From Dendrobates tinctorius (lineage: Eukaryota): a DNA stretch of 64,000 nt. The position numbers and the translations under genes were made by a program. The notes beneath the pieces are model-generated. The model did not search any database and had not been told where the DNA came from. It saw only the letters and a program-made list of their open reading frames with translations. Positions 1-64,000 of this stretch are shown piece by piece (position 1 is the stretch's first letter; each line of letters opens with the position of its first letter). The stretch spans positions 11,842,001 through 11,906,000 of the forward strand of contig NW_027361696.1 in assembly GCF_039654945.1 (NCBI RefSeq), written 5' to 3'.

Positions 1-142
1 GGGCCTGGCCCTGAAGATTGAACCCTCCTCCAACACTGTGGCTGAAGGTCAGACCCTGGAGCTGAACTGTGTGGTCTCTGGGTCCCCGAGTTCTGCCGTT
101 TCCTGGCACCGGAAGAGTCAGCCGCTCTCCCCCAACCACCAG
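1..142 (+). CDS. HSPG2: HSPG2 exon (5' truncated by window), N-half of Ig domain
   Basis: GLALKIEPSSNTVAEGQTLELNCVVSGSPSSAVSWHRKSQPLSPNHQ; donor GTGAGC at 143. Confidence 0.92.
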
Positions 143-3100
143 GTGAGCGGCTGATGGCTGCAGTCACTCCTCCAATCTCATCGGCCGCTGATGGCATCGT
201 TGGGCTCTGGATTCAGCGGCAGCTGCAGATATTACAGGCGAGAATGGCCGATTGTGGATGATCCTCCTGATTATAGCCATTAACCCTTCACTTGTACACA
301 GGTGCTGGGATCTCGTCTGCGCATTGTCCATGCGTCGGTGGCGGACTCCGGCGAGTACATCTGCCGCCTCACCTCCGGAGCAGTCACTCGTCAGGCCGTC
401 ATCACGGTGACTATTACTCGCGCCATCAACCCCGTGCACTGTGAGTCGGATGATTGCATCTCTGGTTAATTTTTAGACTTTTCATTATACTTAAGTCCGA
501 TGTCCTGATATGTTCTCAGCTGGCATCACCCCCACCATCCGCATCGAGTCCCCACTTAGTGCTGTGTCTGAGGGTCAGACTGTGGTCCTGAACTGTGTGG
601 TGGAAGGACAGACGCGTCAGGAGGTGTCATGGTACCGACAGGGACAGCCGCTCTCTCACAATCACCAGGTATCATCACTACTCCTACCAAGGTGTTGTTA
701 GATGTGGTAACACTGCAGAGTATATGGGGGCATCACCCAGGACCCCGCTATCTGGGCCGAGCGGCCTTTCCAATAGTGTGACCAGACAGCCCGAGCATCT
801 GCAGTCCATCAGACACTGACCAGACTTTGCTCCACTCACACCCAGGTTGACGGCTCTCGGCTGCGCATACTTAACGCCTCCCCCCAGGACTCGGGTGAAT
901 ACATCTGCCAGGTGAGCGGCAGCTCTGGGATCCAGGCCGCCTCCATCACCGTCTCCATTGAAGGCTCCAGGCACAGTAAGTCTTTTGTTATCTTGTATTT
1001 TCTCTTCTATTTTCCTTGCTGCCTTTTATTATCTTTTCTTTTTTTTCCTTGTTGCCTTTTATCATCTTTTCTTATTTTTTTCCTTGTTGCCTTTTATCAT
1101 CTTTTCTTTTTTTTCCTGCTGCCTTTTATTAGCTTTTTTCCTTGTTGCCTTCTATTAGCTTTTCTTTTTTACCTTGTTGCCTTTCATCATCTTTTTTTTC
1201 CTTGTTGCCTTTTATCATCTTTTCTTTATCATCTTTTCTTTTTCTTTCCTTGCTGCCTTTCATCTTTTCTTATTTTTCCTTGTTGCCTTTTATTATCTTT
1301 TCTTCTTTTTTACCTTGTTGCCTTTTATTATCTCTTCTCTTTTCTCTTTTCCTTGTTGCCTTTTGTTATCTTTTCTTCTTTTTTCCTTGTTGCCTTTTGT
1401 TATCTTTTCTTCTTTTTTCCTTGTTGCCTTTTATTATCTCTTCTATTTTTCTTGTTGCCTTTTATTATCTCTTCTCTTTTACCTGTTGCCTTTTATTATC
1501 TTTCCTTATTTTTCCTTGTTGCCTTTTATTATCTTTTCTTCTTTTTCCTTGTTGCCTTTTATTACCTCTTCTATGTCCAGGTTTACTGCTTTTCTGCAGA
1601 TTTGAGACTTGATCATCCTCTCTGGATATGTCCAGCATCACCTTTCTGACAAGTTTTTCTTGCCTATGGGCTCGGGGCATTTATTTCTCTTCGTGACGTT
1701 TATTTTCTATGTGATTTTGTTCTTGTAGAATTCCAATATGAACGACGTCCAGAGGAGAATTTGTTTTTCTGGTTCTGTCTCGTTTCTACCCTTACTAATG
1801 GGGCTCTCATCGCAGCCCGCCTGACAGATTCCCGCTATAACGATGGTGGTCATTTATCAGAATATTCTATTTCAGACTCCGGCATATCGGGAGCGATTAG
1901 GATTGAACCGTCATCCCAGACTGTGGAGGAAGGGCAGAACCTGGAGCTGAGCTGCCTCATGGAGGGGCTTTCTGGCCATTCAGTCACCTGGCACCGGTCT
2001 AATGGACGTCCGCTAAGTACTAATCACCAGGTAAGTGAGGCGCGGTCGCCGATGTGCTGCCCACAAATTCGGCAGACTCTCTAATACTCCACTGTTGTCT
2101 GTCAGGTTGTGGGACCACGAATGCGAATCATTGGAGCCACTGTGGCTGATTCTGGCGAGTACGTCTGCCAGGTGAACACCGGATCCAGGGTTCAGGAAGC
2201 CGCCATTACTGTCATCGTGCGGCATTCATCACAAGGTGGGTTGCAAGGGAGATCTGTGCCAGGTGAAAACTCAGTCTATGGCCATCCATCCACAAGACAG
2301 GCGGCCAGAAAAAGAAAGACGTCCTCATGAACTTCTGACCATTGGGGTCCGCAGCCGAGGGCTGAGGTTGTGTGTAATGACTTCCATCTTCTGTCTGTGT
2401 CCTCAGTGCCAGCAAACATCCCCACCCCGATCCTCATAGAGAAGACCCCAGGTCCCGTAGCCGAGGGGCAGACCGTGGATGTAAACTGTGTGGTCATCGG
2501 ACATCCAGATGCCGCCGTTACCTGGATGCGTCCAGGAGCGAGCTTCTCTCCAAACCACCAGGTAACAGAAGATCACCATGTGTTTGAGGTGGTCCCTGCA
2601 GTCCTATGTAGCACCGGTGATACTGGAGTAGATATTACCTGCAGATCCATATAGTACCTGAAAAAATGTAGTAGATGTTACGTGCAGTTCCATGTAACAC
2701 CTGAGATAATGTAGTAGTTACCTGCAGTCATGTGTAACAGCTGAGATACTGTAGTAGATGATACCTGCAGTCCCATGTAACACCTGAGATATTGTAGTAG
2801 ATGTTACCTGCAGTCCCATGTAACACCTGAGATACTGTAGATGTTACCTGCAGTCCCATGTAACATCAGAGATACTGTAGATGTTTTCTGCAGTCCTATG
2901 TAACACCAGAGCCACTGTAGTATATATTACCTGCAGTTCTATGTAACACTAGAGAAACTGTAGTAGATGTCACTTGCAGTCCCATGTAACACCATTCTTC
3001 TCCCACTGTGGATGTGATTTTTAGATTTCGGGATCCCGGCTCCGCATCGTGCAGGCCTCTAGTGCAGACTCAGGGGAGTATGTCTGCCACTACCGCTCTC

Positions 3101-6100
3101 TTTCTGGCGCACTCAAGGCCTCCGTCCTCATCAGCGTCCTCTCTGGGGTGCAGAACGTTTACCGTAAGTCTCTATCTTCCCAATCGGCGCTCTTTGTCCT
3201 CTATGGGACGCAGAACGTTCACCGTAAGTCCCCTTCTTCCCAATCGGTGCTCTTTGTACTCTATGGGGTGCAGAACGTTCACCGTAAATCCCCTTCTTCC
3301 TGCTGTCCTCTATGGGGTGCAGAACATTTACCGTAAGTTCCCGTCTTCCTGCTCGGCGATTCTTGTTCTCTATGGGGCGCAGAACGTTCACCGTAAGTCC
3401 CATTCTTCCTTCACGGCGGTTCTTGTCCTCTATGGGGCCAGAACGTTCACCGTAAGTCCCATCTTCCTGCTTGGCGGTTCTTGTCCTCTATGGGGCACAA
3501 AATGTTTACCATAATTTCCCATCTTCCTGCTCGGCGGTTCTTGTCCTCTATGGGGCGCAGAACGTTCACCATAAGTCCCCTTGTTCCTGTTCGGCGGTTC
3601 TTTTCCTCTCCGGGGTGGACAACGTTCACCGTAAGTCCCCTTCTTCCTGTTTGGTAGTTCAAGTCCTCTCCGGGGAGCAGAACGTTCACCGTAGGTCACA
3701 TTCTTTCTGCTCGGCAGTTCTTGTCCTCTATGGGGCTGTTGACATTCCTCTGATTTCTAGGGCTCGAGTCTCCAGTCATCTCCATCAATCCTCCCAGTGC
3801 CACCATTCGCAAGGGGGAAAATGCCACATTTAAATGCCACGTTCACACGGGGGCTCAGCCGATACGTGTCACTTGGAAGATGGGCCAGAATCAGCCTGTG
3901 CAGGGTAAGGTGTTGGGGCAGGATCTGAGGCGTCAGTGTGAGGAGCTCTGCTCATCTCTGCCCTGTCTCTGCAGATAATGTCCACATCAGCTCCAACGGC
4001 TCTATTATAAATATCGTGGGGGCCCATCACAAGAACCAGGGCGCGTACCGCTGCATGGCCGCCAATGCCTTCGGGGCAGTGGACAGCGCTGTCACTCTGG
4101 TGGTGGAAGGTGAGTGACAGCACGAGATCAGCAGCAGCAGTGCCACACTGGCCATGATGGTTTCTCATCTTCCCTGTAATTTCCAACTACAACTGGTGGC
4201 AGATGCTATTATCTTGCGGCGGCGGTGGAAGTCATCGGTGTCCGTGCATTATTGTGTTCTAGGACGTCCCACAGTGTCGGTGATTCCTCCCGGACCGATT
4301 AAGGTGAATGTGGGAGAAACCGTGTACCTGGAATGTTCTGGGGTGGGAGACCCTCGTCCTGTGGTCAGCTGGCGTCGTACCGGATCTAGACAGACCATCC
4401 GACAACAGAACCATGTTCCACTGGACAGTCACGCGGTGCTACAGGTACTGACCCCTGAGCCGCCACACACTCTGTACTGGACCTGTGCTACAGAACCATC
4501 GTATCACCAATCCTCCTTTCCACACATAGGGTATACCGCCCATGGGCACAGTGTATACTGTCCCCGGGCGCGCAGTGTATACTTCACAGTGTATACCACA
4601 GCGCAGTCTATACGGCCCCCTTGCATGAAGTGTACACCGCCCCGTGCGCAAAGCGTATACCGAATGTGCAGTGTATACCGTCCCCACATGCGCAGTGTAT
4701 ACGTCCCCCTTGCACGAAGTGTACACCGCCCCCGCGCCACAGTGTATACCGCCCCCCATGCGCAAAGTGTATACCGCATGCGCAGTGTATACCGTTCCCG
4801 CATGCGCTGTGTATATGTCCCCGTAGTTTATACCACCCCCCATGCGCGAGTGTATAACGCCCTGCACAAACAATGAATATGTGGTGACAACATGTGTTTG
4901 GTGAGCACAGTTTGGGTAGGATCCTGTGTGGCACCAATGACCTGTAGTCAGTGGATCAGCGCTTGGTTCTCACCGTCCATGTGGCTGCTGTATTCAGGTT
5001 CCTCATCACTTTCTGCCGTAGATTACCTCGGTGAAGCTGGGCGACTCTGGATCTTACACCTGCGTTGGACACAACCCGGCTGGCTCTGCCCAGGTCCTCG
5101 TGGACGTAATTGTTGAAGACCGAGTGATGAAGCCGAGCGCTCCGGCGGCCTCTGTGGAGCAGTCCGTGCACGTGGTGCTGGCCGGGGAGACCGCCACGCT
5201 GCGATGTTCTGCTGCAGGTGACGTCGCCTGTTTCTTCACAAATCCTTTTTTCTATTTTATCAACAGAAACTAAATTTTTCCATTTCCTTGTTGTGCAGGA
5301 AACCCAACTCCGAGCATCACATGGTCCAAGCTGCGGGCGCCACTACCCTGGCAGCACCAGATTGTGAACGACAGCCTGGTCATCCCCAGAGTGGCACAGC
5401 AGGACTCGGGGCAGTACATCTGCAATGCCTCCAACGCTGATGGCCACTCCGAGGTCTTCATCACCCTGGACGTGGAAAGTAAGAAGCGCTCTGCAGCCGT
5501 GTCTTCGCCGCACGACCCGGACTGTGGGGACATCGCTCACTCCTGACAGCAGAATGTTGTGCTTCTGGCACTATCTGCATGAGCTCAGACATGGCAGCAG
5601 GTTACTGAGGCCTCCACCCACACTGAGCGCACCGATGTTTTACACCTGGGGTGATGTTGCTCTGAATATGGGGTTATATGCGGTGATGTTGCTCTCAATA
5701 TGGGTTTACATGTGGTGTCGTTGCTCTGAATACGAGGGTATATGTGATGGTGTTGCTTTGAATACGAGGGTACATGTGATGGTGTTGCTCTGAATATGGT
5801 GGTACATGCAGTGACGTTACTCTGAATACAGGGTGTCACGTAGCCGCTTCTCAGCACGTGACTTGGGGTTGCACCTGCAAGGCTTAATCTATCTCCTCTC
5901 ACTCAATCCAGCATTCAACCTCTGTCCTATGCTGCAATGGAAGCATAAATCACACCCCAACACAGACCACTCTACCCCGCTTCATACACGCTGCCACCAC
6001 TCACCGAACACACAGGCGAACACACAGGCGATGAGTCCCGGAAAATCTACTATTACTGTCTGCCAATCACTAAGATCACACACTCTTAGGTAATGGATTC

Positions 6101-9100
6101 TTTTCGAGTATACAAGGTTCAAACATATTAAAGTTTTAAGCTTTAATAGAAAAGGTACAGTGCTTACCATAAAAGGATATAAAAAACTATGGGAATAAAA
6201 GGTGACATACAAATATGCAAAACTGTTATAAAATAAAAGGGAGAAGCTTACAGAAATATCTAAACTTTTCAGTCTGGTATTCTGTTCCCGGGGGGGGGGG
6301 GATGAATATGAAATGGATCACATCAGCTTGGCTGTCCTCAATCTGTGAACAACTTTCTTTGTGTAGGCCCAATTTATAGGCTTAGCCTGGAGATCAGATT
6401 TCTATACCAGCCTCTCATGGTAATATTCTAATTCCTGGTTTGTGACTGGACGATACTTTACCAATGAATACATTTAGTTTTTCTCTTTGTCGTAAACTTT
6501 CTTTCTCATAGTAAATAGAAAGTGTCAGGCTGCACTAGGTCCCATTTGGCATCTTCCTTCAAAGGCGTCAGAGGTGTGAAATAGTTCCAATTCTGTGTGT
6601 TCTCAGAAAGGCACCCTGGGATCTGAGACCTTTGTGAAGAGCTGCAGCCTAAGAACAGGTGCCAATTTACTGCCAGTCTTACATCACCTACAAATACATA
6701 TTTCCACTGCACAGGGGTACTGTGACGGTAGTGACAATAGTCAAAATCCATGGACAGGCCGTGAGTCAGAGAAGTCAGACTTTTCGAGGTGGGTAAATAG
6801 CAAAAGAATATCTAGTAAACCAAGGGAAAACACGAAGTCTTAAGTCAGGTCACATGTCAGGGTCAGAATACCTGAGAAACAACAGATAAGCAAAGGCTCA
6901 ATAACAAACGGGTTGTCTGAGCACAGTTCAAAGGTCAGCAGCAGAATATCAGATGCAAAGGGGCAATAACAAACGGGTAGTCAAAACACGGTCCAAAGGT
7001 CAGCAGTGGAATATCAGATACAAAGGGGCAATAACAAACTGGGTGTACATGTGGTGGTGTGGCACTGAATATGAGGATACATGTTGCTCTGAATATGGGA
7101 AAACGTGTGTTGTTGCTCTGAGTATGGGTGTACATGAAGTAACATTGCTCTGAATATGGGTGTACTTGCGGGGACGTTGCTCTCAGTTTGGTGGTACATG
7201 AGGTTACATTGCTCTGAATACGGGTGTACTTGCAGGGAAATTACTCAGAGTGTGGGGATACATGAGGTGACATTGCACTGAATACGGGGTACATGTGATG
7301 TGCCTCTGAACACGGAGTACATGTGGTGACATTGCTCTGAATACAGGTGTACTTGCGGGGATATTGCTCTGAGTTTGGAGGTACATGAGGTGACAATGCA
7401 CTGAATACGGTGTACATGTGTTATTGCTCCGAATACGGGGTACATTTGGTGATTGGCTCTGAATACTGAATATGGGGTACATGTGATGACATTGCACTGA
7501 AAACGGGGGTACATGCGGTGATGTGGCTCTGAATACAGGGGACATGGGGAGTTGTTGAAGTGAATGCAGAGGTACATGCAATGACATTGCACTGAATACG
7601 GGGGTACATGCGGTGATGTGGCTCTGAATACAGGGTACATGTGGAGACGTGGCTCTGAATACGTGGTACATGTGGTGACATGGCTCTTTATACGGGGGTA
7701 CATGTGGTGTGGTGAGGATTCTTTTTCAGTGTCCACTTTTTTCCGTTTTCCCCAGACCCGCCGTACGCTACTACCCTCCCTGATGAGCTGTCCGTCAGTG
7801 TCGGGGAGCCCATCCGGTTGCAGTGTTTGGCGCACGGGACTCCTCCTCTTAAATTCCAGTGGAGTAAAGTGAATGGTTCGGTGCCACGCTCCGCCGAGCT
7901 GCCTGACGGCGTCCTGCTCATCGGTCGGGCGGCAGCCGCAGACGCCGGCACCTACCGCTGTGTCGTCAGTAACAAGGTTGGAGAAAGTGCGGCCCTGACC
8001 CACATCAGTGTTGTAGGTGAGTGATGAAGAGCTCCACCATGTTGTATCGTCTCGGAGGTCTCCGCCATGCTGGGGGCCACATCCTGGGGTCGGATATGCC
8101 CCGCTGCCATCGCCCTCCTCACCACGGGATCATTGCTCTCACTGACTTCTCCTTTTTCCTTTCTGCAGCTCCCTTTTCTGTCCGGGTGTCACCTCAGGTC
8201 GACACCAAGGCTGTGGGTGACACAGCAGAGTTCACCTGCACCGTCCTGGGAGTTCCCCGGGCAAAGATCCAGTGGATTAAAGAGGGTGGAGAGCTCCCAT
8301 CTAATCACACAGTGGACGGGGCCTGGATCCGGTAAGAGGGGTCTCACCCCGCACACATTGTAATTCCCCCCTCAGATCTAACCCTGTGGGATGGGAACGC
8401 CGCGCCGTGTAAGGCCACTGGGTATTCGCAACTCTGAGAGCTCGGGCGGGGGAACATTTACTGACTGCGGAGGGTTTGACCGCTGGGACCAGGCCTGGAC
8501 CACAAGAATTGTGCTCCATATGATGGGCCCCTAAGAATGGGGCCCATCTGTATGGAGAACAATTCTTGTAGTCCAGTCCTTGTCTGTGGGACCATCAGAG
8601 TAAGTGGAGCACCGACCTCCCCTCCACTTAATTTAGACAGAGCCACTCCCCCCATTCAGGGTTAGATCAGACCCCAGTAGTGATTGAGAGATCTCCCACC
8701 CTATGGAAAATCCTGGGCAGCCATCATTAGAGCCCAGGTGTTCAGCGGCTCTGCTCATGGGGCCGCCATCATTCCTGCAGGTTGGCGTCTCATCTGCGAG
8801 TCACTTATACTCCAAGAATTATGCACCAACCACTCGCCCCAATGCTCTGGAGAAACCCATCACCTCAATGTCTGGCCCGTCACTCGAGGTCTGGCGAGTC
8901 ACCCCGAGATCTGGCCTGTCACCCCAAGGTCTGGCAAGTTACCCCGAGGTCTGGCCCATTATCCCATGGTCTGGCTCATCACCCCGAGGTCTGGCCCACT
9001 TTCCCAACATCTGGCCCATTATCCCAAGGTCTGACTTTTCACCCCGAGGTCTGGCCCGTCACTCCGAGGTCTGGCCCATTATCCCAAGGTCTGGCTCATC

Positions 9101-12100
9101 ACCCCGAGGTCTAGCCCATTTTCCCAAGGTCTGGCTCATCACCCCGAGGTCTGGCCCTTTATCCTAAGGTCTGGTTCATCACCCTGAGGTCTGGCCCATT
9201 ATCCCAAGGTCTGGCCCATTATCCCAAGGTCTGACTCGTCACCCCGAGGTCTGGCCTGTCACCCCAAGGTCTGGCCCATTATTCCGAGGTCTGGCTCATA
9301 ACCCCGAAGTCTGGTCCATTTTCCCAAGGTCTGGCCCATTATCCCAAGGTGGTCTGGCTCATCACTCCGAGGTCTGGTCTGTCACCCTGAGGTCTGGCCC
9401 ATTATTCCAAGGTCTGACTCATCCCGAGATCTGGCCCATCATCCCGAGGTCTGTCCCGTCACCCCGTGGTCTGGCCCATTATCCCAAGGACTAGCTCAGC
9501 ACCCCGAGGTCTGGCCCCGTGTGTTCAACCCATGGTCTGGCTCGTCATCCTGAGGTCTAATCCATCACCCCAAGGTCTGGCCCCATGTGATGACCCTGAG
9601 GTCTGGCCCATCACCCCGAGGTCTGGTCCGGTGTGTTGACCCTGAGGTCTAGTCCATCACCCCGATATCTGACCCCATTTGTTCATCCCAGGATCACCAA
9701 CTTGGAGCGAGGGAATGAAGGCGTCTATACTTGCAGAGCCAGTAGCAAGTTGGGTCAGGCCCAAGACAGTGGGAAGCTGGTGGTCCAAGGTGAGTTCCAG
9801 GACTCTGGGACTGGATGGAGACTGCTGGAGCTGGTCTGTCCCTGACACACCCTTGTCTTCTCACCATCAGTGCTGCCAAAAGTCAGAATTAACATCCGCA
9901 CTTCGGTGCAGACCGTACTGGCCGGAAACTCTGTGGAGTTTGAATGTCTTGCTATTGGAGACCCTGGTGCCAAAGTCACCTGGAGCAAAGTGGGAGGCCG
10001 GCTGTCGAGTGATGCCATTGTGAGTGGCGGCCTGCTGCGGATGGAGCAGGTGAAGCAGTCAGACGCTGGACAGTACCGTTGCACAGTCACCAATCACGTG
10101 GGCGAGGTGCAGTCCCATGTCATCCTCCATGTGCAGTGTAAGGGGACGTTCTTGTTTTATCTCCTCCTCTTCTTCCCCTCGATATCTCCTGACTCATCAT
10201 TGTCTTCATCTTCACAGCCGTCCCGCAAATCGCTGCCCAACCAGAGATGAAGGAGATTACAACCGGATCCACCGCTGTCTTTCCCTGCCTGGCATCTGGA
10301 TTCCCGGTGCCTGAAATCACATGGACTAAGGTACAGTGTGTGAGGCTCTCCACCAGGGGTTCACCACCACATGTGGGCAGTCAGAAGGCCCCCCAGTAAC
10401 CGGGGAACACCAGCACATGTGTACAGTTGGAGGGGCCCTCAGGACCCCAGGTATTCCACCACATGTGGGCAGTCGGCTGCCTCCCCTGTAATCGGATTAC
10501 AACACCACATTTGGGCAGTCGGAGTGCCTCCCCTGTACTCGGGGTACACCGCCACATGTGGGCGGTCGGAGTGCCTTCCCTGTACTCGAGACCTCCCAGT
10601 ACCTCAGAATACACCACCACATGTGTGCAGTGGGAGGGGCCCTCAGCACCCAAGGTATACCAACGCATGTGGGCAGTCGGAGGGGCCTTCAGTACCTGAG
10701 GTATACCACCATATCTGGGCAGTCGAAATGCCTCCCCTGTAATCGAGGTACATCACCACATGTATACAGTAGGAGTACCTCCCCCTGTAGATACATATGT
10801 ACATATGATGTCTGGGTCGTCTGACTCTCCTCTGTGTTGTGACAGCTGGAGGGCGACCTCCCCAGTGAAGCTGGAATAGAGAATAACGTCCTCACGATAC
10901 CGTCTGTGAAGCCTGAAGATGCCGGCACTTATGTGTGCACCGCCGCCAACCGCCAGGGCAGAGTTACCGCCTTCTCCATGCTTAAAGTGCGAGGTGAGAC
11001 GTTGTAGGAAGAGAATTTCTAGGGTTCATTATCTGTGTCTACAGACCGTTCTTGATATGGGAAAGGCTTCGGAGCTATGTCTTGTCTGGCACAGGTCCTT
11101 GCCAGGGGCAGTGTCGAGTCTGGCAGAGGCCCCTACTCCAGGGTGGTGTTGTGTCTGGCAGAGGCCCTTCTCTGGGCCGGTGTCCTCTCCGGCAGAGGTC
11201 CTTCTCCGGGCCGGTGTCCTCTCCGGTGGAGGTCCTTCTCCGGGCTGGTGTCCCTCCGGCAGAGGTCCTTCTCGGGGGAGGTATCCTGTTTGGCAGAGGT
11301 CCTTCTCGGGGAAGGTATCCTGTTTGGCAAAGGTCCTTCTCGGGGGCAGGACACTGCCCCCGAGAAGGACCTCTGCCAAACAGGACACCTTCCCCAAGAA
11401 GGACCTCTGCCAAACAGGGCACTGCCCCTGAGAAGGACCTCTGTCTTGTTCGGCAGAGGTCCTTCCCAGGGTGGTGTCCTCTCCAGCAGAGGTCCTTCCC
11501 TGGGGCTGTGTCTTGTCTGGCAGAGGTCCATCTCATGGGCCGTGTTTTGTCTGGCAGAAGTCCGTCTGTCTAGCAGAGGTACTTCTCCGGGGCAGTGTCT
11601 TGTCTGGCAGAGGTTTGTTTCTGGGGCCATGTTTTGTTCGTACAGGACTGGCTCCAGGTCATGTCTTGTTCTGCACAGGCTCAGCTCCAGGGCTGTGTCT
11701 TGTTCGGAAAAGTTCCGGATCCAGGTCCAGGTTTTGTTCGGTAGAGGTCCTTCTCCCGGACCGTGTCTTGTTCGGCATAAATCCGGCTCCAGGGCTGTGT
11801 TTGGTTTTGTAGATGTCTGTCTCTGGGCCCTTGTCTTGTTCAGCACAGGTCCAGCTCCAGGGCTGTGTTTTGTTCTGTAGATGTCCAGCTCTGGGGCCTT
11901 GGCTTGTTCGGTGCAGGTCCGGCTCTGGGGCCTTGTCTTGGTCGGCACAGGTTCGGCTACGGGCCTTGTCTTATTCGGTGCTGGTTTGGCTCCAGGGCTG
12001 TGTTTTGTTCTTTAGAAGTCCGGCTCTAGAGCTGTAGCTTGTTTGTAACAAGTCCGACTCCAGGGCTGTTGCTTGTTTGGCTCCAGGGTTGTATTTTGTT

Positions 12101-15100
12101 CTGTAGAGGTCCGGCTCTGGGGCCTTAACCTGCTTGGCACAGGTCCGACTATAGGGCCTTGTCTTGTTTGGCACAGGTGACCGTGTCTTGTTCGGCACAG
12201 GTTCGGCTCCAGGGTTGTGTCTTGTCCGGCACAGCTTCAGCTCCAGGGCCTTGTCTTGTTCGGCACAGGTCCATTCCGGGGCCGTGTATTGTTTGGCACA
12301 GGTCCGCCTCTGGGGCCAAGTCTTGTTCGGCACAGATCCGGCTTCGGGGCTGTGTCTTGTTCGGCACAGGTCCGGCTCCGGGGCTTGTGTCTTGTTCAGC
12401 ACAGGTACACCTCCGAGGCCATGTCTTGTTCAGCACAGGTCCGCCTCCGGGGCCGTCCCTTGTTCAGCACAGGTCCAGCTCCGGGGCCTTGTCTTGTTCG
12501 GCAGAGGTCTTGCTCCAGGGCCTTGTCTTGTTTGGCAGAGGTCTGGCTCCAGTGCTGTGTTTTGTTCTGTAGAGGTCCAGCTCTGAGCCCTTGACTTGTT
12601 TGGCACAGGTCCGACTCCAAGGCCTTGTCTTGTTCGGCACAGGTCAAGCTTTGGGGCCTTGTCTTGTTCGGCACAGGTCCTGCTCCAGGGCCGTGTCTTG
12701 TTTAGCAGAGGTCCTGCTCCAGGGCCGTGTCTTGTTTGGCAGAGGTCTGGCTCCAGTGCTGTTTTGTTCTGTAGAGGTCTGGCTCTGGGCCCTTGACTTG
12801 TTTGGCACAGGTCCAACTCCAGGGCTGTGGCTTGTTCAGCATAGATCCAGCTTTGGGGCCTTGTCTTGTTTGGCATAGGTCCGGCTCCTGGGCTGTCCGT
12901 CATTTCTTCTGTTTTTCTTAATATATTTCAGAGAGGGTTGTGCCGTATTTCACCGGTCATTCCCACCTCGCGCTGCCGAGCCTGAAAGATGCCCACAAGA
13001 AATTTGATATAAAGATCACCTTCCGGCCAGACTACGCCGATGGTAAGAGCTTGGCGATGGCGTGCACTGTATGTATATATTATGTACACACCGTGAAGGG
13101 TCCGGGGTAATGATGGAGCTTTTATCTACGAAACCTGGAGGAGGAGACGCCGGTGGGGACGGTTATTGCCACACGTTTCGGCTCCTGTATTAGCAGGTCA
13201 GATGACTGACTGTAATATCAGTCACCTCTGCTCCTACTGTAAAGACCCCCTCTATGGTATTAGGCCTGTGACTCCCAGCTGCTGGTCTCCTCTCACTCTG
13301 TACTCCTCTTCTCTCCCCCAGCCCTTGTCCTGTACTCCGGTAAGTGCCCGGCCTTGCATGTCAGCCTGCACAGCCGTCCTCCCATCTGATCCCATGTTTG
13401 CAGTGTTCAGAATGGCGAGATACTGTAGAGATGCATGAACCCTCGTCCTCGAGGGCAGCGGCCCCCCAAGTGCAGCCACAGCATGGTCTGAAGCCGAGAA
13501 GGGACTCCCATCATGCATTGTTCTGTGCACCATGTGACTGTAGCAGATTCCTACTACACATGTCACCGTCTTCCCCCAGCATAACAACGTGGGCGATGCC
13601 GTTCAGTGTTCAGCATCACTCCCATCATCCCCCTCCATGTAGAGACCTCGGTATTACTCCTATCATTCCCCTCATTTTAGAGGTCTCGGTATCAGGCTGT
13701 GTTCACACGTAGCATTTTTTTGCGGCGATTTTAAACGAGCGATTTTGCCTCGAAAACGCAAAAAAAAGCATCCCATGCAATCCTATGGCATTCCGCACAT
13801 GCTGTGCTAATGCTGAAGATTTTTCCGCGGCGGAATTGCATCGCGGAAAAATACGCAGCATGCTCATTCTTTGTGCGAAATCGCGGGAAAATCCGCACAC
13901 ATAGGAATGCATTGTTCTGCTTACTTTCCGCATGTGGCTGTGCCCACCATGCGAAAAGTAAGCAGAACATTTGCGGATGGTACCCACGGTCTGGAGGAGA
14001 GGAGATTCTCCTCCAGGCTCTGGGTACCATATCCCTGTAAAAAATAGAATTAAAATAAAAAAATCATCATATTCTCACCTTCCGATGTCCCTCGCAGCAT
14101 CACCAGGCCTCAGCGATGCTCCCGGCAACTCCCGTTCCCAGGGATGCATTGCGACAATGACCTTTGATGACGTCGCGGTCTCGCGAAACCGCGACGTCAT
14201 CAAAGGTCATTGTCGCAATGCATCACGGAACAGGACCTGCCGGGAGCATCGCAATGATCGGGAACGCTGCGCCGCCAGAAGGTGAAAAAAACACCATTTT
14301 TTATTTTTTTTTAATTATTTTTAACATTAGATCTTTTTACTACTGATGCTGCATAGGCAGCCCCAATAGTAAAAAGTTGGTCACACTAGTCAAACACTAT
14401 ATTTGACGAGTGTGACCAACCTGTCAATCAGTTTTCCAAGTGATGCTAAATACGCTTGCAAATCGCTAGTTTTTCCGCGGGAAATAGGCGGGAATTAAAA
14501 TGCGGTTTTCTCGCATATTTCCCGAGGAATGGAATTCCGGAATTCCCGCAGAAATTTCCGCGGCAATTTCGCAACGTGTGCACATAGCCTCACTCCCATT
14601 GTCCCCCTCCTTGTAGAGGCCTTGGTATCACTCCCATCATCTCCCTCATTTTAAAGGCCTTGGTATCACTCCCATCATCCCCCTCCATATAGAGGCCTTG
14701 GTATCACTCCCATCATCCCCCTCCATATAGAGGCCTTGGTATCACTCCCATCATCCCCCTCCTTGTAGAGGCCTCGATATCGCTCCAATCATCCCCTTCC
14801 TTGTTGAGGTCTCGGTATCACTCCTATCATCCCCTTCATTTTAGAGACCTCGGTATCACAACCATTATCCCCCTCCTTGGAGAGGCCTTGGTATCACTCC
14901 CATCATCCCCCTTCTTGTAAAGGCCTTGATATCACTCCCATCATCCCCCTCCTATTAGAGACCTCGGTATCGATCCCATCATTCCCCTCCTATTTGAGGT
15001 CTCGGTATCACTCCCATGATCTCCCTCATTATAGAGGCCTCGGTATCACTCCCATCATCCCCCTCCGTGTAGAGAACTCGGTATCATTCTCATTATCCCC

Positions 15101-18100
15101 CTCCTTGTAGAGGCCTTGGTATCGCTCCCATCATCTCCCTCCTTGTAGTGGTCTCAATATCACTCCCTAAAGGATCTGAAAATGTCAGGAGCAAGTGTGC
15201 GTGTCAGGAGTGAGCGCTCGTCAGGAGTGAACGTGCATGTAAGGAGCGCGCGCGTGTCAGGAGTGATCGCGCATTTCAGGAGCGAGCGTGTGTGTCAGGA
15301 GTGTGCGTGTCATGAGTGAATGTGTGTCAGGAGCAAGCGCGTGTCAGGTGCAAGTGCGTGTGTCAGGAGTGAGTTTGCGTCTCAGGAGCGAGTGCGTGTG
15401 TCAGGAGCGAGTGCGCGTGTCAGGAGCGAATCAGGCCCTTTTTTTCCTCTCCCAGCCTCCGTATGTAATGTGTTTGCAGTAATTCTCTGTGATGTGACGC
15501 TCCTCTCTAATGCAGCTTCTTATCTACAGACAGAGGTCGATGATATTCGTCCCCTCCCCCTGTTTTAATAACCAGCTGAGGGAAAGCAGACAGCTGTAGG
15601 CTGATAATAACATAGAAAAGGGCCATGGCTATTGGCCCCCTCCCAGAGTAATGCCGCCAACCCTAGGACGCCTCACAAATGGCAAATCAATTTGATGTGC
15701 CAATTCTGGTGCTTTACAAATGGAAGGAGAGGGGGATATGTCAGCTCACCACAGCTAGAGCCTTGTTGGGTGGAGGTAGATCGCTCTAAGCTGTCCCAGT
15801 CTTGGACTTAATCAAGTGTAAAAAGGAGGAAAGTAATCTCCAAACCAAGGTGGAAAAAAATTTATGAAAACTCATTATTTTTCCAATATTAAAGATAAAT
15901 GTTCTGGTGATCATCAGAAATCCACAATCGACTGAGCCACGTGTTTCAGCTCGGAGCCGGAATCATGGTGTATAACAACATAAAGTGGGAAGGATCTGAT
16001 GTGTCCGGCTCCAGGTCTACACTGGTGTATGTGAGGATAGAAAGTAGTCACCTGGGAAATTACCCCCGTGGAGGACAAAGTAGGCAGGATGCGTAAGAGC
16101 CAGGAAAAAAAACGCAACAAAGTGACCATTTCCCCTACAAGAAACAGTCATCCCATTGTGATAGCGAGTTCATGCCGTCCGCTCCACGTCCGCCCCATTT
16201 CATACAAAACATTTATACTATGGAGGTGTCATGATCCATGCTGGATCAGGACAGATAAAAAGCACAGGTAACCTTTTTTTTTCTTAAGCTGTGCTTAAGT
16301 TTGGTTTTTGCCCCCGGTGGCCATTAGGATTATTTCACTGTGGTGTCTTTTGTTCTAAATTTGCCCCCGGTGGTGGTCAGCGTCATTGCACTCTGGTTTC
16401 TTTAGTTAGTGCACATGATTATAATGCAGGTGTGATTGCTCTGGCTCTGCTATAAAAGAGTCACAGGTGTTGCAATCAGTGTTGATTATAGTGTTCATTT
16501 CAACCATCCTTGGTGGAGGAAGGAGCTGGAGAGCGTTCCTTGCAGCACTGTCTTAGCCCTGGTGTGGAAGGAGTCAGAAGGGATTTCCTTGTCGCTCTGA
16601 CAGAGCTTGGTGGCAGCTATTCAGGAGTAGAGCTGCATTCTGGTGGTGGACTCTGTTGCCAGGAGCAAGTGCAACAGAGTAAAGCTAAGTGGTGTTTCCC
16701 TGTTTGTGTTTTTCCTTAGTGTGTATTAGTACAGCGGTGGGGCCAGTGCCTGCGCCACCCAGCTCCCTAGCAAGGGATAGGTGTAGGGTGTGCTAGGGCG
16801 ACAGGTTACTGATCGGCGCCCGGTGCGGAATCGGCATAGGGAACGTTAGGAGCGTTAGGGACGCTGACTCGGGAGTGCAGGAGGTCTCCACGTCCCCTTT
16901 CCCTATCGCAGGGCCCACCGTTGTAACTGTTTCCCCTTACCCCGTGTCTTGTTGTTGTAGTACCGGCCGGCTGGCTGTGTCACACAGGACAGTATCACGT
17001 GCCGCGTCTTGTAGTTTCAGTTACCGGCCTGCGGGTCGCGTCACACAGGACAGGTCATCGTGACAGGAGGCTAATAAAAGAGATAAGAGGCTGAAACATT
17101 GGGGTTATAGAGACCCTAAAAGTGCTGAGTCCGGAGTACAGAACATGGGTAGACAGAAGTTATTATCAGAACATGTTACCAGTGGTAATAATGACTCTCT
17201 TATCACATTCTCCACCCAATATAATCCGCAGTGTTTGGAGATCATTCATATTAGAAAAGTATCCTCCAATATTAAGCAAATATGCCCGGCTTTCAGGAGT
17301 CCTAAAAATCAGGGGTGAGGTGTGTTACTAAGAGAGCGCCCACACCGGACAATAGGGCAACAAACAATCTTCCCAATCTACATGGCTTTCCCTTAAATGG
17401 TTTTATAAATGTGGACATACACCGTCTAAGGCAGGGGTCTCAAACACACGGCCCACGGGCACTGTAGTTCCCTGGTGTAAGTCATGCCTCCATGCAGACA
17501 TTCACAAACAAACATATATACTATCACTGATCAGGAATTGTCAATACACAGCTTTATTAATGTAAAACAGCATTAGTAATCAAATTTGAGGGTGTAACAC
17601 ACAATGGACCGGACCACGCTGGTGTTATTAGTTTGGGAGGGAGCCAGTATCCATGGCCCCTTCCCAGCCTGTTAATATCAGCCCGCAGCTGTCTCCTTAG
17701 TCTCTGCTGGTTATTATAAATAGTTGGGAAGCCATGTCATTTTTTGGGGAGGTCTCCCCTTTTTTTAATAACCAGTAAAGGCTGCACAGACATCTGTGAG
17801 CTGATATTAATAGGCTATGAAGCTTCATGGATATTGGTTTCTTCCCAGAATAATAACACCAGCCCCCAGCTGTCTGCTTTCCCTCAGCAGGGTATTAAAC
17901 ATAAGGGGACCCTATGGCATTTTTTTCATGTAATTTTATATTTATTAGCGAAATCCATGTACCGTGCGCTGCACTGCAATGATTTTATATCTCACTGACA
18001 TCTTTATCTATCCTGACTCGTCACGCTGTGCATTTACTGTACTCGGCTGATGAAATGTCGGGTTTCCTATGAGGTGTGTGTATATATCGGGCACTATATG

Positions 18101-21100
18101 CATGGTCCGTGTGCCTTGCATTTTTTGTTTTTTTTACTTGCACCCATAGACTTGCATTGGTGAATTTCAGCCGTTTTACTCGGCATACTGTGATTTTTTT
18201 CTGCCATTGCATTCGTCGATGTTAGATACAGATGAGCGAATCCTAATGCTGTTGGATCTCCACAGGAATGCTGGTCTACAGTGGGCAGAAGAAAAGCAAA
18301 GGTGCAGATTTCATGTCCTTCGGCCTTGTGGGAGGTCGCCCAGAATTCCGGTGAGGAGGGCTGTTGTGGGTCATTACTGGAGCTGTGAGGTCATTTCTGG
18401 AGGGGATGTAGGGTCATATCTAGGGAGGGATGTTAGTTCATTCCTTAGGGGGTTGTGGGTTCATATCTAGGGGGGTTGTGGTATCATGCCTGGGGGGGGG
18501 GTTGTGGGTACTTTTCTGGTGGGTGGATGTGGGGTTATATCTAGGGGGAGTTGTGGGTTCATTCCTGGGGGGGTTGTAGGGTCATATCTAGGGAGGTTGT
18601 GGGTTCATTCCTTGGAGGGTTGTGGGTCATATCTAGGGGGTTGTGGGTTCACTCCTGGTGGGGGGGATGTGGGGTAATTCCTGGGGGGTTGTGAGTTCAT
18701 TCCTTGGGTGGGTTTTGGGCTAATATCTAGGGGGGTTGTCCTTGGTGGGGTTGTAGTGTTGGGGTAGCTCTTTAGGGAGGGCTAAATTAACCCTTCACGG
18801 TTGATCCAGTGATTTCCAAATTAGTTCATAGGGCGTTGCTAACAACTGGGAATGACCACACGGAGACGGGGGTCTCTGTATGGGAGGATCCAGGAAGATC
18901 ACTAGTCCCCTTTATTTTAGTCACTTCTTTTATAATCTTTTGCTTAATTATGCAAAGTTCTCAACTACGAATAACATCATTGTAATACATTCACTTTATA
19001 AGCCAATAGTATTGCAAGAAAATCGGAATATGTCCCTAGTTACGTGACGTAGAGAATAGAACAATAGCACATTCTTTTAGGGTCTCATATCTCATATCTT
19101 GTACAAGCTAGAACAGTCTAGTTTCATAACAGCTGCAAATTTTCACCTAATTACAACATTTATCTTGAAAACAACAAAATGGCGTCGCAAGCACAAAAAT
19201 GGATCCTGGAGAACAAGATGTCCTGTACAACTGAATACTGTACTTCACAGTAGGGTCAAATCTTGAGGGGGTTGTGGGTTCATTCCTGGGGTGGGTTGTG
19301 GGGTCATATCTATGGGGGTTGCGGGTTCATCCCTTGGGGGGTTGTAGGGTCATATCTAGGGGTGTTGTGGGTTCTTTACTGGTGAGGAACGTGGGGTCAT
19401 ATTTCAGGGCAGTTGTGGGTTCATTCCTGGGGAAGGTTATGGGGTCATATCTAGGGGGGGGGTTGCGGGTTCACTTATGGTGGGGGGATGTGGGGTCATT
19501 CCTATGGGAGTTGTGGGGTAATTACTGTTGGGGTTTTAGGATCATATCTAGGGGGGGTTGTGAGTCCACTCCTGGTGGGGGGATGTGGGGTAATTCCTAG
19601 GGGTTGTGGGGTCATTCATGGGGGATTGTGGGGTCATTCCTGGAATGATTGTGGGGTCATTCCTATGGGGGTTGTGGGGTAGTTACTGAGGGGATTGTGG
19701 GGTTATGTCTGGAGGGTTGTGGGGTCATATCTAGGTGGGTTTTGGGGTCATGTCTGGAGGGGGGTGTGCAGCCATCTTTACACTCTGAATGTGGCCAAAA
19801 TATGCCTCCTCGCTCGCAGTCTGATCTACTCGTGCAGGGAGCAGATTTCCAGGCTACCTTCCATGACATCCATGAAGCTTCAGACCTCATGATGCGTCTC
19901 CCGTGTGATTGCAGATTTGATGCTGGTTCGGGGATGGCAACGATCCGGTACCCAATACCCATTAGTCTTGGTGAGTTCCATACTGTGACCCTATACAGGA
20001 ATCTGAACCAAGGATCTCTAGTGGTGGATAACCAGATGCCTGTGAACGGCAGTTCCCAGGTACCTTGTCCTTTTGGATGCTTCTTACATGTGGTCACCCA
20101 GCCGCGTGATATTCGCACACATTACACATCTACTTCCCCTGTGCAGGGCAAATTCCAAGGTCTGGACCTGAATGAAGAGCTGTATCTCGGGGGTTATCCA
20201 AACTTTGAGGCCGTGTCCAAGACCGACTTGAGCAGAGGGTTTGTTGGTGAGTAGAGACTTGTCCCTGTTCTTGCATCGTCTCTTTCAGAGCTGACATCCC
20301 TCACGGTAATGCCTTTGTGTCCCCCAGGCTGCGTCCGTCAACTGATCATCCAGGGTGAGGAAGTCATCTTCAAGGACTTGGATCTCATTGCAAACAGCAT
20401 CTCCAGCTGCCCAACCTGTAGAGACCGACCCTGCAAGGTAAAGGTCCCGGCCGGAGGAGACGTATCCACATGTGAGGGCACCCGCATCTTTACAAGCTAT
20501 ATGTGAACACACTGATGAGAAACCTGCACTGGCCACCTTCCTTCCATCGACCGCTGCACGTTCAGGAGGTGGCCCCAGTATTGCTGCACTGAATGGCCAC
20601 CTTCCCTCTGTTCACCTCCCCTCTGTTCACCTCTGCCAGGGCTGGCATTTGGAGCAGGCAGACCAGGCAGATGCTTGGGGCCCCCACCTACAAAGGGGAC
20701 CCCTGCGTCTTCAACCCCTTTATGAAGTGCCCAGTGGGTGTACAGCAGTGAATAACGCTGTGCATCCTCTGTAGTCCCGGGGTGTCTCTCCCAAGCCCCC
20801 CTCTCTCCTGCTTTCTCCCTGCAGTCAGGTTAGAAGTTGAGATTGAGGGGGAGGGGCCAATTACAAAACAGCGACAGTGTCAGAGCCGGGCCAGGAAGAT
20901 GCCTGCAGTCCTGTCTGTGTCCTCTCCTCCTGAGTCGTCATCATGACTGCTCCTAGCACTGTCCAGAGAATGGATATGCATAAGTGAAGCCACAGAACCT
21001 GGTAAGTATACATGTATATGTGTATCTGTGTGTGTACATGTGCAGTACACAGTGTGTGTCTGTATATGTGTATATAGTATGTGTGTGCATATACAGTATG

Positions 21101-21126
21101 ATTGTGTATATCTGTCGTGCATGTGA

Positions 21127-21167
<41 letters not shown>

Positions 21168-59808: not shown

Positions 59809-60475
59809 TTAAATGTCACCTGCTTAACCCAGCAGGAAGTATGGCTAAAGATCACTAAAGTTGACAAATCCCCGGGCCCGGATGGCATACACCCCCGAGT
59901 ACTGCAGGAATTAAGCACAACCATAGACCATTATTTTTAATCTTTAAAGATTCCATAATAACAGGGTCTGTACCACAGGACTGGCGTATAGCAAATGAGG
60001 TGCCAATATTCAAAAAGGGGACAAAAACTGAACTTGGAATTATAGGCCTGTAAGCTTAACCTCAACTGTGGGTAAAATCCTGGAGGATTGCCTAATAGAT
60101 ACTATACTGGAGTATCTGAAGAAGAATAACCTCATGACCCAATATCAACATGGGTTTACAAGGGAGCGTTCCTGTCAGAATAATCTGATAAGCTTCTATG
60201 AAGAGGTAAGTTCCGGACTAGACCAAGGAAACGCAGTGGACGTGGTGTACATGGACTTTTCAAAAGCTTTTGATACAGTGCCACATAAAAGGTTGATACA
60301 TAAAATGAGAACAATGGGGATAGGGGAAAATATGTGTAAGTGGGTTAAGAGCTGGCCCAGGGATAGGAAACAAAGGGTGGTTATTTAATGGAACACACTC
60401 GGACTGGGTCCCGGTTAGCAGTGGGGTACCACAGGGGTCAGTTTTGGGCCCGCTTCTTTTTAACATATTTATTAA

Positions 60476-63449: not shown

Positions 63450-64000
63450 TTAATGACCTTGTAGGGGGCATTCAGAGTATAATTTCAATGTTTGCAGATG
63501 ACACTAAACTCTGCAGGGTAATCAATACAGAGGAGGACAATTTTATATTACATGAGGATTTATGTAAACTAGAAGCTTGGGCTGATAAATGGCAAATGAG
63601 CTTTAATGGGGATAAATGTAAGGTCATGCACTTTGGTAGAACAAACAAGATGTTTAATTACGTGCTTAATTGTAAAACACTGGGCAAAACTGTCACTGAA
63701 AAAGACCTGGGTGTATGGGTGGACGACAAACTCACATTTAGTGGCCAGTGTCAGGCAGCTGCTGCAAAGGCAAATAAAATAATGGGATCTATTAAAAGAG
63801 GCATAGATGCTCATGAGGAGAACATAATTTTACCTCTATACAAGTCACTAGTGCGACCACACTTAGAAAACTGCGTACAGTTCTGGTCTCCGGTGTATAA
63901 GAAAGACATAGCTGAACTGGAGCGGGTGCAGAGAAGAGCGACCAAGGTTATTAGGGAACTGGGGGGTCTACAATACCCAGACAGGTTATTACACCTGGGG

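What the first reader, a model, noticed from the sequence alone, without database searches (positions are those of the whole stretch)
3136..3760. Tandem array of ten copies of a perlecan exon end plus its 5' splice donor
Seen: the 60-bp unit is the last ~28 nt of the exon followed by the first ~32 nt of the intron. Eight of ten copies keep GT (GTAAGT at 3164, 3224, 3333, 3393, 3452, 3631; GTAAAT at 3284; GTAGGT at 3691), and two are mutated to AT. Donors 3224 and 3284 are in frame with no stop. Using them would add 20 or 40 aa (RKSLSSQSALFVLYGTQNVH...) to the linker between two Ig domains. All later donors frameshift or lie past the TAA at 3334-3336. Inference: this is a ladder of competing donors, with VNTR copy number possibly tuning linker length or the share of NMD-targeted perlecan mRNA. 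The last donor is 70 nt from the acceptor, suggesting a tiny ancestral intron expanded by duplication across its own boundary.
Basis: partly seen in the sequence, partly recalled or inferred. Interest (0 to 1): 0.8.

Follow-up and report, generated by a model that had tools for sequence, protein, structure and literature searches.

The report
Splice-donor minisatellite in frog perlecan intron
An intron of a frog's perlecan gene is almost filled by ten tandem copies of the exon end plus its splice signal, but assembled transcripts use only the first, authentic signal, as in human F7, so it is a real but already known kind of oddity.

Summary
A 60-bp minisatellite (3136-3736, 10.2 copies, about 80% alike) starts 28 nt inside an Ig-domain exon and fills most of the 597-nt intron. 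It reiterates the 5' splice site: six copies read ACC|GTAAGT, two are weaker GT sites and two are dead AT sites.

The gene is perlecan (HSPG2) of a frog. Spliced contigs from three RNA runs (two related species, three studies) show one joint over the array, 3163->3761, which uses the first donor. No contig enters units 1-3. Perlecans from frog to sturgeon have the same one-residue junction, and none of the 15 annotated isoforms of the nearest frog carries a +20 or +40 aa insert. The pseudo-donors survive at the neutral rate of the array, and the two lost ones are CpG transitions.

This layout is known from human F7 IVS7, LMNB2, PDGFA, IFI6 and CBS (PMC1557585), where the most upstream donor wins. 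Earlier notes of this scan report it at three other genes (ROGDI, SURF2, HGD) on other DNA of the same genome.

The 'ladder of competing donors' and NMD tuning are not supported, though contigs cannot exclude minor use of donors 3224 and 3284. Verdict: a new member of a known kind, of modest interest.

The parts
3025..3163 (+). Exon A: second half of an I-set Ig module of perlecan domain IV. It ends in phase 1 (...VLSGVQNVY + C of an Arg codon). Its last 28 nt (3136-3163) are the exon part of repeat unit 1.
   Evidence: Joints 2559->3023 (cut +2) and 3163->3761 in spliced contigs of X1, X20 and X5. I-set match. 73% identity to XP_069802948.1 residues 2890-2934.
3136..3736 (+). 60-bp minisatellite of 10.2 units (60, 60, 49, 60, 59, 59, 60, 60, 60, 60 nt plus a 14-nt partial unit). 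Each unit is about 28 nt of exon end plus about 32 nt of intron start.
   Evidence: TRF. Unit alignment with pairwise identity of 58-87%, units 1 and 2 being closest. Single-copy depth in the DNA run X19. Unit absent elsewhere in the window.
3164..3760 (+). Intron of 597 nt, GT..AG, phase 1. The authentic donor ACC|GTAAGT is at 3164 and the acceptor AG at 3759-3760.
   Evidence: Joint 3163->3761, 'skips 597, GT..AG', in X1, X20 (organism A) and X5 (organism B).
3224..3229 (+). Pseudo-donor 2, ACC|GTAAGT, in frame (+60 nt, +20 aa if used).
   Evidence: No joint seen from 3223.
3284..3289 (+). Pseudo-donor 3, ACC|GTAAAT (weaker at +5), in frame (+120 nt, +40 aa if used).
   Evidence: No joint seen from 3283.
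3333..3338 (+). Pseudo-donor 4, ACC|GTAAGT, +169 nt, which shifts the frame. The in-frame TAA at 3334-3336 overlaps it.
3393..3696 (+). Pseudo-donors 5, 6, 9 and 10 (GT at 3393, 3452, 3631, 3691), all beyond the TAA, and two dead copies (AT at 3511 and 3571; CpG to CpA at the C|G junction).
3737..3760 (+). Unique tail of the intron with the pyrimidine tract and acceptor (…TTGACATTCCTCTGATTTCTAG).
3761..3904 (+). Exon B: first half of the next I-set Ig module (GG completes the Arg codon, then LESPVISINPPSATIRKGENATFKC...).
   Evidence: Joints 3163->3761 and 3903->3974 (cut +1). Ig_3 / I-set match. 87% identity to XP_069802948.1 residues 2936-2982.

Best explanation
This is a locus-specific intronic minisatellite born from a tandem duplication of about 60 bp that straddled the exon/intron boundary of a small (about 70-nt) phase-1 intron. 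The intron lies between two Ig modules of perlecan (HSPG2) domain IV in a frog. Expansion to ten units copied the 5' splice site nine more times. The spliceosome uses the first, authentic donor at 3164, so the whole array is removed as intron and the protein is unchanged. The downstream copies are silent pseudo-sites that decay neutrally. Shown here: the anatomy, the gene identity, the use of donor 3164 in steady-state mRNA of two related species, the ancestral status of the junction, and the neutral decay of the pseudo-donors. Inferred: the reason the first donor wins. I take this to be 5'-to-3' 'first functional site' selection and exon definition, as demonstrated for the same layout in human F7. 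Also inferred: the array is a tolerated by-product of a minisatellite-rich genome and not a regulator.
For: (1) Spliced contigs in X1, X20 and X5 join 3163 to 3761. Their depth in bin 3089-3209 (5.98, 60.2, 40.3) equals 75/121 of the mRNA depth (9.65, 97.2, 65), so nothing extends past 3163. Bins 3210-3451 are empty in all three. (2) Only weak unspliced traces exist deeper in the intron: X20 at 3499-3706 with depth 4.5 against 97, and X5 at 3621-3790 with depth 3.4 against 65. Both run through donors 3631/3691 unspliced. (3) In perlecans of another frog, Ascaphus, Hymenochirus, a turtle and a further, more distant species (P0073), exon A end and exon B start are one residue apart. All 15 isoforms of the nearest frog are identical there. 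The sturgeon gene has the same phase-1 junction, read from its DNA, and an intron of about 1 kb without repeats. (4) Retention of pseudo-donors matches the array's overall decay: 7 of 9 keep GT against 6.9 expected, and 5 of 9 keep GTAAGT against 4.0 expected (P=0.37). The junction CpG is lost in 2 of 10 copies, like the other CpGs of the unit. (5) Twenty minisatellite arrays cover about 9.1 kb of the first 31 kb. My own rough estimate is therefore that 0.5-1 array would span a donor by chance. (6) Precedent: in F7 IVS7 only the most upstream of 5-9 identical donors is used. LMNB2 and PDGFA behave alike (PMC1557585).
Against: All RNA evidence is from assembled contigs, which drop rare variants and show neither tissue nor stage. 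Transcripts spliced at donors 4-10 would carry a premature stop and could be removed by NMD before they are seen. In two of the human precedents (IFI6, CBS) the two pseudo-sites nearest the authentic donor are used as well, and here those two are exactly the in-frame ones. Older in-vitro work, recalled from my own knowledge, often found the donor nearest the acceptor favoured. So exclusive use of the first site is not a foregone conclusion.
Confidence: 0.8

Rival explanations
1. One reading: the copies form a ladder of competing donors. Donors 3224 and 3284 would give perlecan isoforms with a linker 20 or 40 aa longer. The later donors would feed NMD, and copy number would tune both.
For: Six donors share the identical 9-mer ACC|GTAAGT. 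Donors 2 and 3 are in frame without a stop. In human IFI6 and CBS the two nearest pseudo-sites are used alongside the authentic one (PMC1557585). Array structure differs between the window and organism C, whose contig holds about one unit more between 3380 and 4400.
Against: There is no joint other than 3163->3761 in three RNA runs of two species, and no contig covers units 1-3. No annotated orthologue or isoform has an insert at this junction. The pseudo-donors are conserved no better than neutral. The inserted peptide (RKSLSSQSALFVLYGTQNVH) is translated intron, with no sign of constraint.
Confidence: 0.12
2. The array of pseudo-donors is kept because it binds U1 snRNP and helps the gene, for instance by strengthening recognition of the weak-exon-side donor ACC|GT or by suppressing premature cleavage. 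It would act as an intronic splicing enhancer, not as a set of used sites.
For: Columns 17-34 of the unit (CAGAACGTTCACC|GTAAGT) are the best conserved part: 93% against 82% for the intron tail, with unit 1 left out. The authentic donor has no exon-side match to the consensus (ACC in place of CAG).
Against: The ten copies are not independent, so column conservation reflects the history of duplication. The 9-column window at columns 4-12 is as conserved as the donor window. Two donors are already dead through CpG decay. Neighbouring introns of 70-81 nt splice without any such array. The sturgeon orthologue has none.
Confidence: 0.05
3. Assembly artefact: the array, or its copy number, is a mis-assembly of a shorter repeat.
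For: Short-read contigs of organism C break inside the array, and one of them is out of register.
Against: A 208-nt contig of organism A matches 3499-3706 with no difference. Contigs of organisms B and C are collinear over 3074-3299, 3517-4400 and 3621-3790. The units are 13-42% diverged from each other, so they can be placed unambiguously.
Confidence: 0.03

Closest known systems
Human coagulation factor VII (F7) intron 7 VNTR (37-bp unit, 5-9 copies; Borensztajn et al. 2006, PMC1557585)
   Same: The first unit of a minisatellite spans the exon/intron boundary, so the authentic donor is followed by several identical pseudo-donors. Only the most upstream one is used, even though some downstream sites would keep the frame.
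   Different: Here the unit is 60 bp, with 28 nt of exon against 4 nt in F7. The donor is GTAAGT (F7: GTGGGT). The units are 13-42% diverged and not identical. The host is a frog and the gene is perlecan. Polymorphism within the species and functionality of the pseudo-sites are untested here.
Human LMNB2 intron repeat (100-bp unit, 10-15 copies) and PDGFA intron 4 repeat (81-bp unit, 16-18 copies), as cited in PMC1557585
   Same: [quoted passage not shown] Only the authentic donor is used.
   Different: Different genes, unit lengths and host. I know these cases only through the citing paper.
Human IFI6 (6-16) intron 2 minisatellite and CBS intron 13 31-bp VNTR, as cited in PMC1557585
   Same: The donor is reiterated by a boundary-spanning minisatellite.
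   Different: In these two genes the two pseudo-sites nearest the authentic donor are used constitutively. No such use is seen here in contigs.
ABCA7 intron 18 VNTR (PMC5954066)
   Same: An intronic VNTR reported to affect splicing of the host gene (title and abstract listed).
   Different: I read only the listing, not the paper, so I cannot say where that VNTR lies relative to the exon boundary. No length effect is tested here.

Membership tests
Boundary-spanning (donor-reiterating) minisatellite, F7 IVS7 type | Head-to-tail array of several units inside an intron | tested here: met
   TRF: 3136-3736, period 60, 10.2 copies. The intron is 3164-3760.
Boundary-spanning (donor-reiterating) minisatellite, F7 IVS7 type | The first unit contains the exon/intron junction, so the donor sequence is repeated downstream | tested here: met
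   The exon end at 3163 is fixed by spliced contigs. The array starts at 3136. Nine further junction copies follow, of which seven keep GT.
Boundary-spanning (donor-reiterating) minisatellite, F7 IVS7 type | The most upstream donor is the one used, and downstream copies are silent (or only the nearest are used) | tested here: met
   The only joint is 3163->3761 in X1, X20 and X5. The limit of the test is that these are contigs, so minor forms are not excluded.
Boundary-spanning (donor-reiterating) minisatellite, F7 IVS7 type | Copy number varies between individuals (VNTR) | tested here: inconclusive
   A DNA contig of the related organism C holds about 58 nt more than the window between 3380 and 4400. 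That is a difference between species, seen in one short-read contig. No second individual of the same species was available.
Boundary-spanning (donor-reiterating) minisatellite, F7 IVS7 type | Pseudo-sites are functional when the authentic site is inactivated | not testable with these tools
   This needs a minigene or a natural donor mutant.
Perlecan / HSPG2 | A long run of I-set Ig modules, most split over two exons (domain IV) | tested here: met
   Ig half-exons and whole-Ig exons lie on the + strand from 2 to 11004. Exon pairs are confirmed by joints.
Perlecan / HSPG2 | The Ig run is followed by laminin-G and EGF modules (domain V) | tested here: met
   Laminin_G at 19649-20251, 25497-25841 and 27088-27612; EGF at 25186-25503, 27616-27807 and 29221-29532.
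Perlecan / HSPG2 | The closest named proteins are perlecans, collinear over several exons | tested here: met
   Identity of 73-88% to XP_069802948.1 'basement membrane-specific heparan sulfate proteoglycan core protein', with the exons in order at 2890-3996. Next come Hymenochirus and Chelydra HSPG2.
Perlecan / HSPG2 | N-terminal SEA, LDL-receptor and laminin-B/EGF domains (domains I-III) | not tested
   These lie upstream of the window. The Hymenochirus orthologue lists Laminin_B and a laminin-type EGF domain.
Regulated alternative 5' splice sites coupled to NMD | Alternative junctions are present in RNA | tested here: not met
   None in four runs at a reporting threshold of 1%. These are contigs only, so the test is weak for rare forms.
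Regulated alternative 5' splice sites coupled to NMD | Alternative sites are conserved beyond the neutral expectation | tested here: not met
   7 against 6.9 copies with GT and 5 against 4.0 with GTAAGT (P=0.37). CpG decay at the junction is like that at other CpGs.

The most novel reading that the evidence does not exclude
Donor-reiterating minisatellites may be unusually frequent in this frog genome. This locus adds to three more that the scan noted in about 780 windows. The in-frame pseudo-donors 3224 and 3284 may be used at a low or tissue-specific level, giving perlecan linker variants whose share depends on the array allele. The genome would then be a natural, many-locus test bed for how vertebrate spliceosomes choose among identical 5' splice sites.
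Probability: 0.08. Interest if true: 0.55.

Novelty: new member of a known kind. Interest (0 to 1): 0.25.

Why it matters
The locus is a natural replicate, in an amphibian and in a very large matrix gene, of the classic F7 model for 5' splice-site choice. Six identical strong donors (ACC|GTAAGT) compete for one acceptor, and the first wins in steady-state mRNA. It also shows why such arrays can persist. If the first donor wins, a duplication across a donor leaves the mRNA unchanged, so in a minisatellite-rich genome these arrays should accumulate as harmless by-products. For annotation it is a warning: gene predictors may pick an in-frame pseudo-donor and invent +20 or +40 aa perlecan isoforms. 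No new mechanism is implied.

Tried and rejected
(1) A word search of the protein collection with the read-through ORF 3025-3333, meant to catch any predicted protein that runs into the array, found nothing. Only proteins of 57-180 aa could have been seen, so this says little.

(2) I tried to fetch the orthologous intron of other frogs. The Hymenochirus gene spans 167 kb and no DNA was returned. The gene of the nearest frog sits on a 93-Mb record and was not tried, for the same reason.

(3) The locus L001, fetched for the distant perlecan P0073 (species not identified), has a run of N next to the orthologous exons. I left it unfilled and drew no intron length from it.

(4) The sturgeon intron is about 1 kb without repeats. 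It confirms the ancestral junction but cannot give the ancestral intron size in frogs. The 'tiny ancestral intron' rests on collapsing the array and on the neighbouring introns of 70-81 nt.

(5) The solved-structure search with an LG exon gave agrin and neurexin first. No solved perlecan LG2 appeared among the matches, so this was not useful for naming the gene.

(6) Turri et al. 1995 (IFI6) is not held in the library. I cite it only through PMC1557585.

(7) The joined (spliced) protein models, canonical or with +20/+40 aa, were not searched because they have no reference. Exons were searched one by one.

(8) I considered and rejected the idea that the unit belongs to a dispersed repeat family. 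Depth in the DNA run is at single-copy level in the array, unlike the 43-bp array next door.

Full report
OBSERVATION

Tandem Repeats Finder reports one array at 3136-3736 with period 60, 10.2 copies, 80% matches and score 614. I cut the units at the junction motif and got lengths of 60, 60, 49, 60, 59, 59, 60, 60, 60 and 60 nt, followed by a 14-nt partial unit. Pairwise identity between units is 58-87%. Units 1 and 2 are the closest pair and share a variant, CCCAATCGG.

A 21-nt core of the unit matches nine times between 3151 and 3698 and nowhere else in the 64 kb, where 0.02 matches are expected by chance. The (pseudo)donor G positions are as follows:
- ACC|GTAAGT at 3164, 3224, 3333, 3393, 3452 and 3631.
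- GTAAAT at 3284.
- GTAGGT at 3691.
- ATAATT at 3511 and ATAAGT at 3571.

Translation from 3028 confirms that donors 3224 and 3284 would add 60 and 120 nt in frame. It also confirms that the 49-nt unit 3 shifts the frame and that TAA lies at 3334-3336. The last donor is 70 nt from the acceptor.

GENE

The flanking exons are halves of I-set Ig modules. The + strand carries such exons from position 2 to about 11004. Laminin-G and EGF exons follow between 19.6 and 29.5 kb. This is the layout of perlecan domain IV followed by domain V.

I ran a full search of the representative library with one whole-Ig exon and then a local BLAST of six exons against the hits. One protein, P0006, came out collinear with all six at 73-88% identity. 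Its sources name it 'basement membrane-specific heparan sulfate proteoglycan core protein isoform X4', XP_069802948.1. The next best are gene models from Ascaphus truei and Hymenochirus boettgeri, HSPG2 of Chelydra serpentina, and a sturgeon model. So the gene is perlecan and the host is a frog. Earlier notes of the scan call it a poison frog, which I did not verify.

WHICH DONOR IS USED

The run search found no run on record as RNA. However, X1, X20 (organism A) and X5 (organism B) hold long contigs (3054, 3045 and 8848 nt) that lie on the exons only. X19 (organism C) is DNA at about 8x depth and about 3% diverged.

All three RNA-like runs show eight GT..AG joints in 2000-5600. Across the array there is exactly one joint, 3163->3761 ('skips 597, GT..AG'). 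I asked for differences present in as few as 1 read in 100, and no joint from 3223, 3283 or any later pseudo-donor was listed.

The depth figures agree with this. In bin 3089-3209 the values 5.98, 60.2 and 40.3 are exactly 75/121 of the mRNA contig depths 9.65, 97.2 and 65. Nothing therefore continues past 3163, and bins 3210-3451 are empty in all three runs.

Two weak contigs lie deeper in the intron:
- X20, 3499-3706, depth 4.5, no difference from the window.
- X5, 3621-3790, depth 3.4.

Both run unspliced through donors 3631/3691, and the second also through the acceptor. They look like pre-mRNA and not like use of late donors.

The limits of this evidence are clear. These are assembled contigs, which drop rare variants, and forms sensitive to NMD may be under-represented.

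COMPARATIVE EVIDENCE

In P0006, Ascaphus, Hymenochirus, Chelydra and a further, more distant perlecan (P0073), the residues aligned to exon A and to exon B are separated by one residue, R or S, which is the split codon. The motif ...Y|R|L(E/Q)(S/T)P(V/I)IS is conserved. All 15 annotated isoforms of P0006's species are identical across this junction.

The sturgeon locus L002 has the same phase-1 junction (…C|GTGAGT … CAG|GT…), an intron of about 1 kb, and no tandem repeat. So 3163|3761 is the ancestral junction and the 28 exon nucleotides of unit 1 are ancestral coding sequence. The array copied them, not the other way round.

Contigs of organism C are collinear with units 1-3 (3074-3299, 2+2 differences) and with 3517-4400. 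Organism B holds 3621-3790. The array therefore predates the split of these species. The units differ from each other far more (13-42%) than the species do (about 3%), so the array is old. One contig of organism C holds about 58 nt more than the window between 3380 and 4400, a hint of a different unit number.

SELECTION ON THE PSEUDO-DONORS

Unit 1 is under selection as the real exon end, so I left it out. The remaining nine units agree with the consensus at 87% of positions. On that basis 6.9 copies should keep GT (observed 7) and 4.0 should keep GTAAGT (observed 5, P=0.37).

Both dead donors are G-to-A changes at the C|G junction dinucleotide. The other four CpGs of the unit have decayed in a similar share of copies or more. 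So there is no sign that the pseudo-donors are either preserved or purged.

The block CAGAACGTTCACC|GTAAGT is somewhat better conserved than the intron tail (93% against 82%). But the copies are not independent, and another 9-column window scores the same, so I give this no weight.

WHY IT IS THERE

The first 31 kb of the window hold 20 separate minisatellite arrays at score 150 or more, which cover about 9.1 kb. Nearly every intron longer than 150 nt is mostly array.

My own rough arithmetic, an inference, runs as follows: 20 founding duplications of about 40 nt, times about two dozen donors, divided by 31 kb, gives 0.5-1 donor-spanning array expected by chance in this stretch alone.

With the array collapsed to one unit the intron would be 70 nt, like its neighbours of 70, 75 and 81 nt.

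The 14-nt partial unit at the 3' end (GTCCTCTATGGGGC) shows a short direct repeat flanking the first unit. That is the usual footprint of slippage or unequal exchange (inference).

HOW IT WORKS, AND WHAT IS KNOWN

The layout is described in the literature. Borensztajn et al. [quoted passage not shown] They found that only the most upstream of five to nine identical donors is used. The pseudo-sites are functional if the upstream ones are destroyed, and even in-frame downstream sites are not used. They proposed a 5'-to-3' scanning choice.

Their introduction lists the same layout in four other human genes (references):
- PDGFA: only the authentic site is used.
- IFI6: the two nearest pseudo-sites are also used.
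- CBS: the two nearest pseudo-sites are also used.

The perlecan array behaves, as far as contigs can show, like F7, LMNB2 and PDGFA. IFI6 and CBS are the reason I leave about 10-25% for some minor use of 3224 and 3284, which happen to be the in-frame ones.

After I had reached this reading, a look-up of the scan's notes showed that the same layout was reported at ROGDI, SURF2 and HGD introns on other pieces of this same genome, with the same F7-type verdict. I did not test those loci. They suggest the phenomenon is recurrent in this frog.

VERDICT

The origin story is supported. The functional 'ladder / NMD tuning' reading is not supported but is not strictly excluded. This is a new member of a known kind. 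Its interest is modest: it is a clean natural replicate of the F7 model and a caution for gene annotation.

NOTES ON THE RULES

- Exons were searched one by one, by reference. The joined, spliced models (canonical and +20/+40 aa) were not built or searched.
- The run of N in locus L001 was left as it is.

Noticed in passing
window 2595-2993: A 43-bp minisatellite (9.5 copies) fills the preceding intron. Summed contig depth over it reaches about 14,000 in the DNA run X19 against about 8 on flanking single-copy sequence, and it is also high in the RNA runs. Its unit therefore belongs to a very abundant genome-wide repeat family, unlike the locus-specific 60-bp unit.
   Followed up: partly
window 1-31000: There are twenty separate minisatellite arrays (units of 19-120 bp) covering about 9.1 kb. 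Nearly every longer perlecan intron is mostly tandem repeat, for example 1010-1572, 7111-7709, 8856-9678, 11624-12893, 14590-15167, 23860-24393 and 26324-27247. Within 2000-5600, where spliced contigs fix the exon ends, only the 60-bp array overlaps an exon. Exon ends elsewhere in the window were not fixed.
   Followed up: partly
window 3380-4400 versus run X19 contig 6: The DNA contig of the related organism C is about 58 nt longer than the window here, and its first 186 nt align out of register with small indels at 3411-3456. The middle of the array differs in structure between the two species, while units 1-3 and the last units are collinear.
   Followed up: partly
window 19649-29532: Exons of perlecan domain V (three laminin-G pieces and three EGF pieces) lie here.
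   Followed up: partly
window 55993-57075, 60032-60385, 63428-64000: Long open frames on the + strand look, by eye, like non-LTR retrotransposon parts (an endonuclease-like N-terminus and reverse-transcriptase motifs such as YMDFSKAFDTVPH). They were not run against any family library.
   Followed up: no
L001 1682-2182: The locus fetched for the distant perlecan P0073 (species not identified) carries a run of N between an Ig exon and the orthologue of exon B. It was left unfilled, and no intron length was drawn from it.
   Followed up: no
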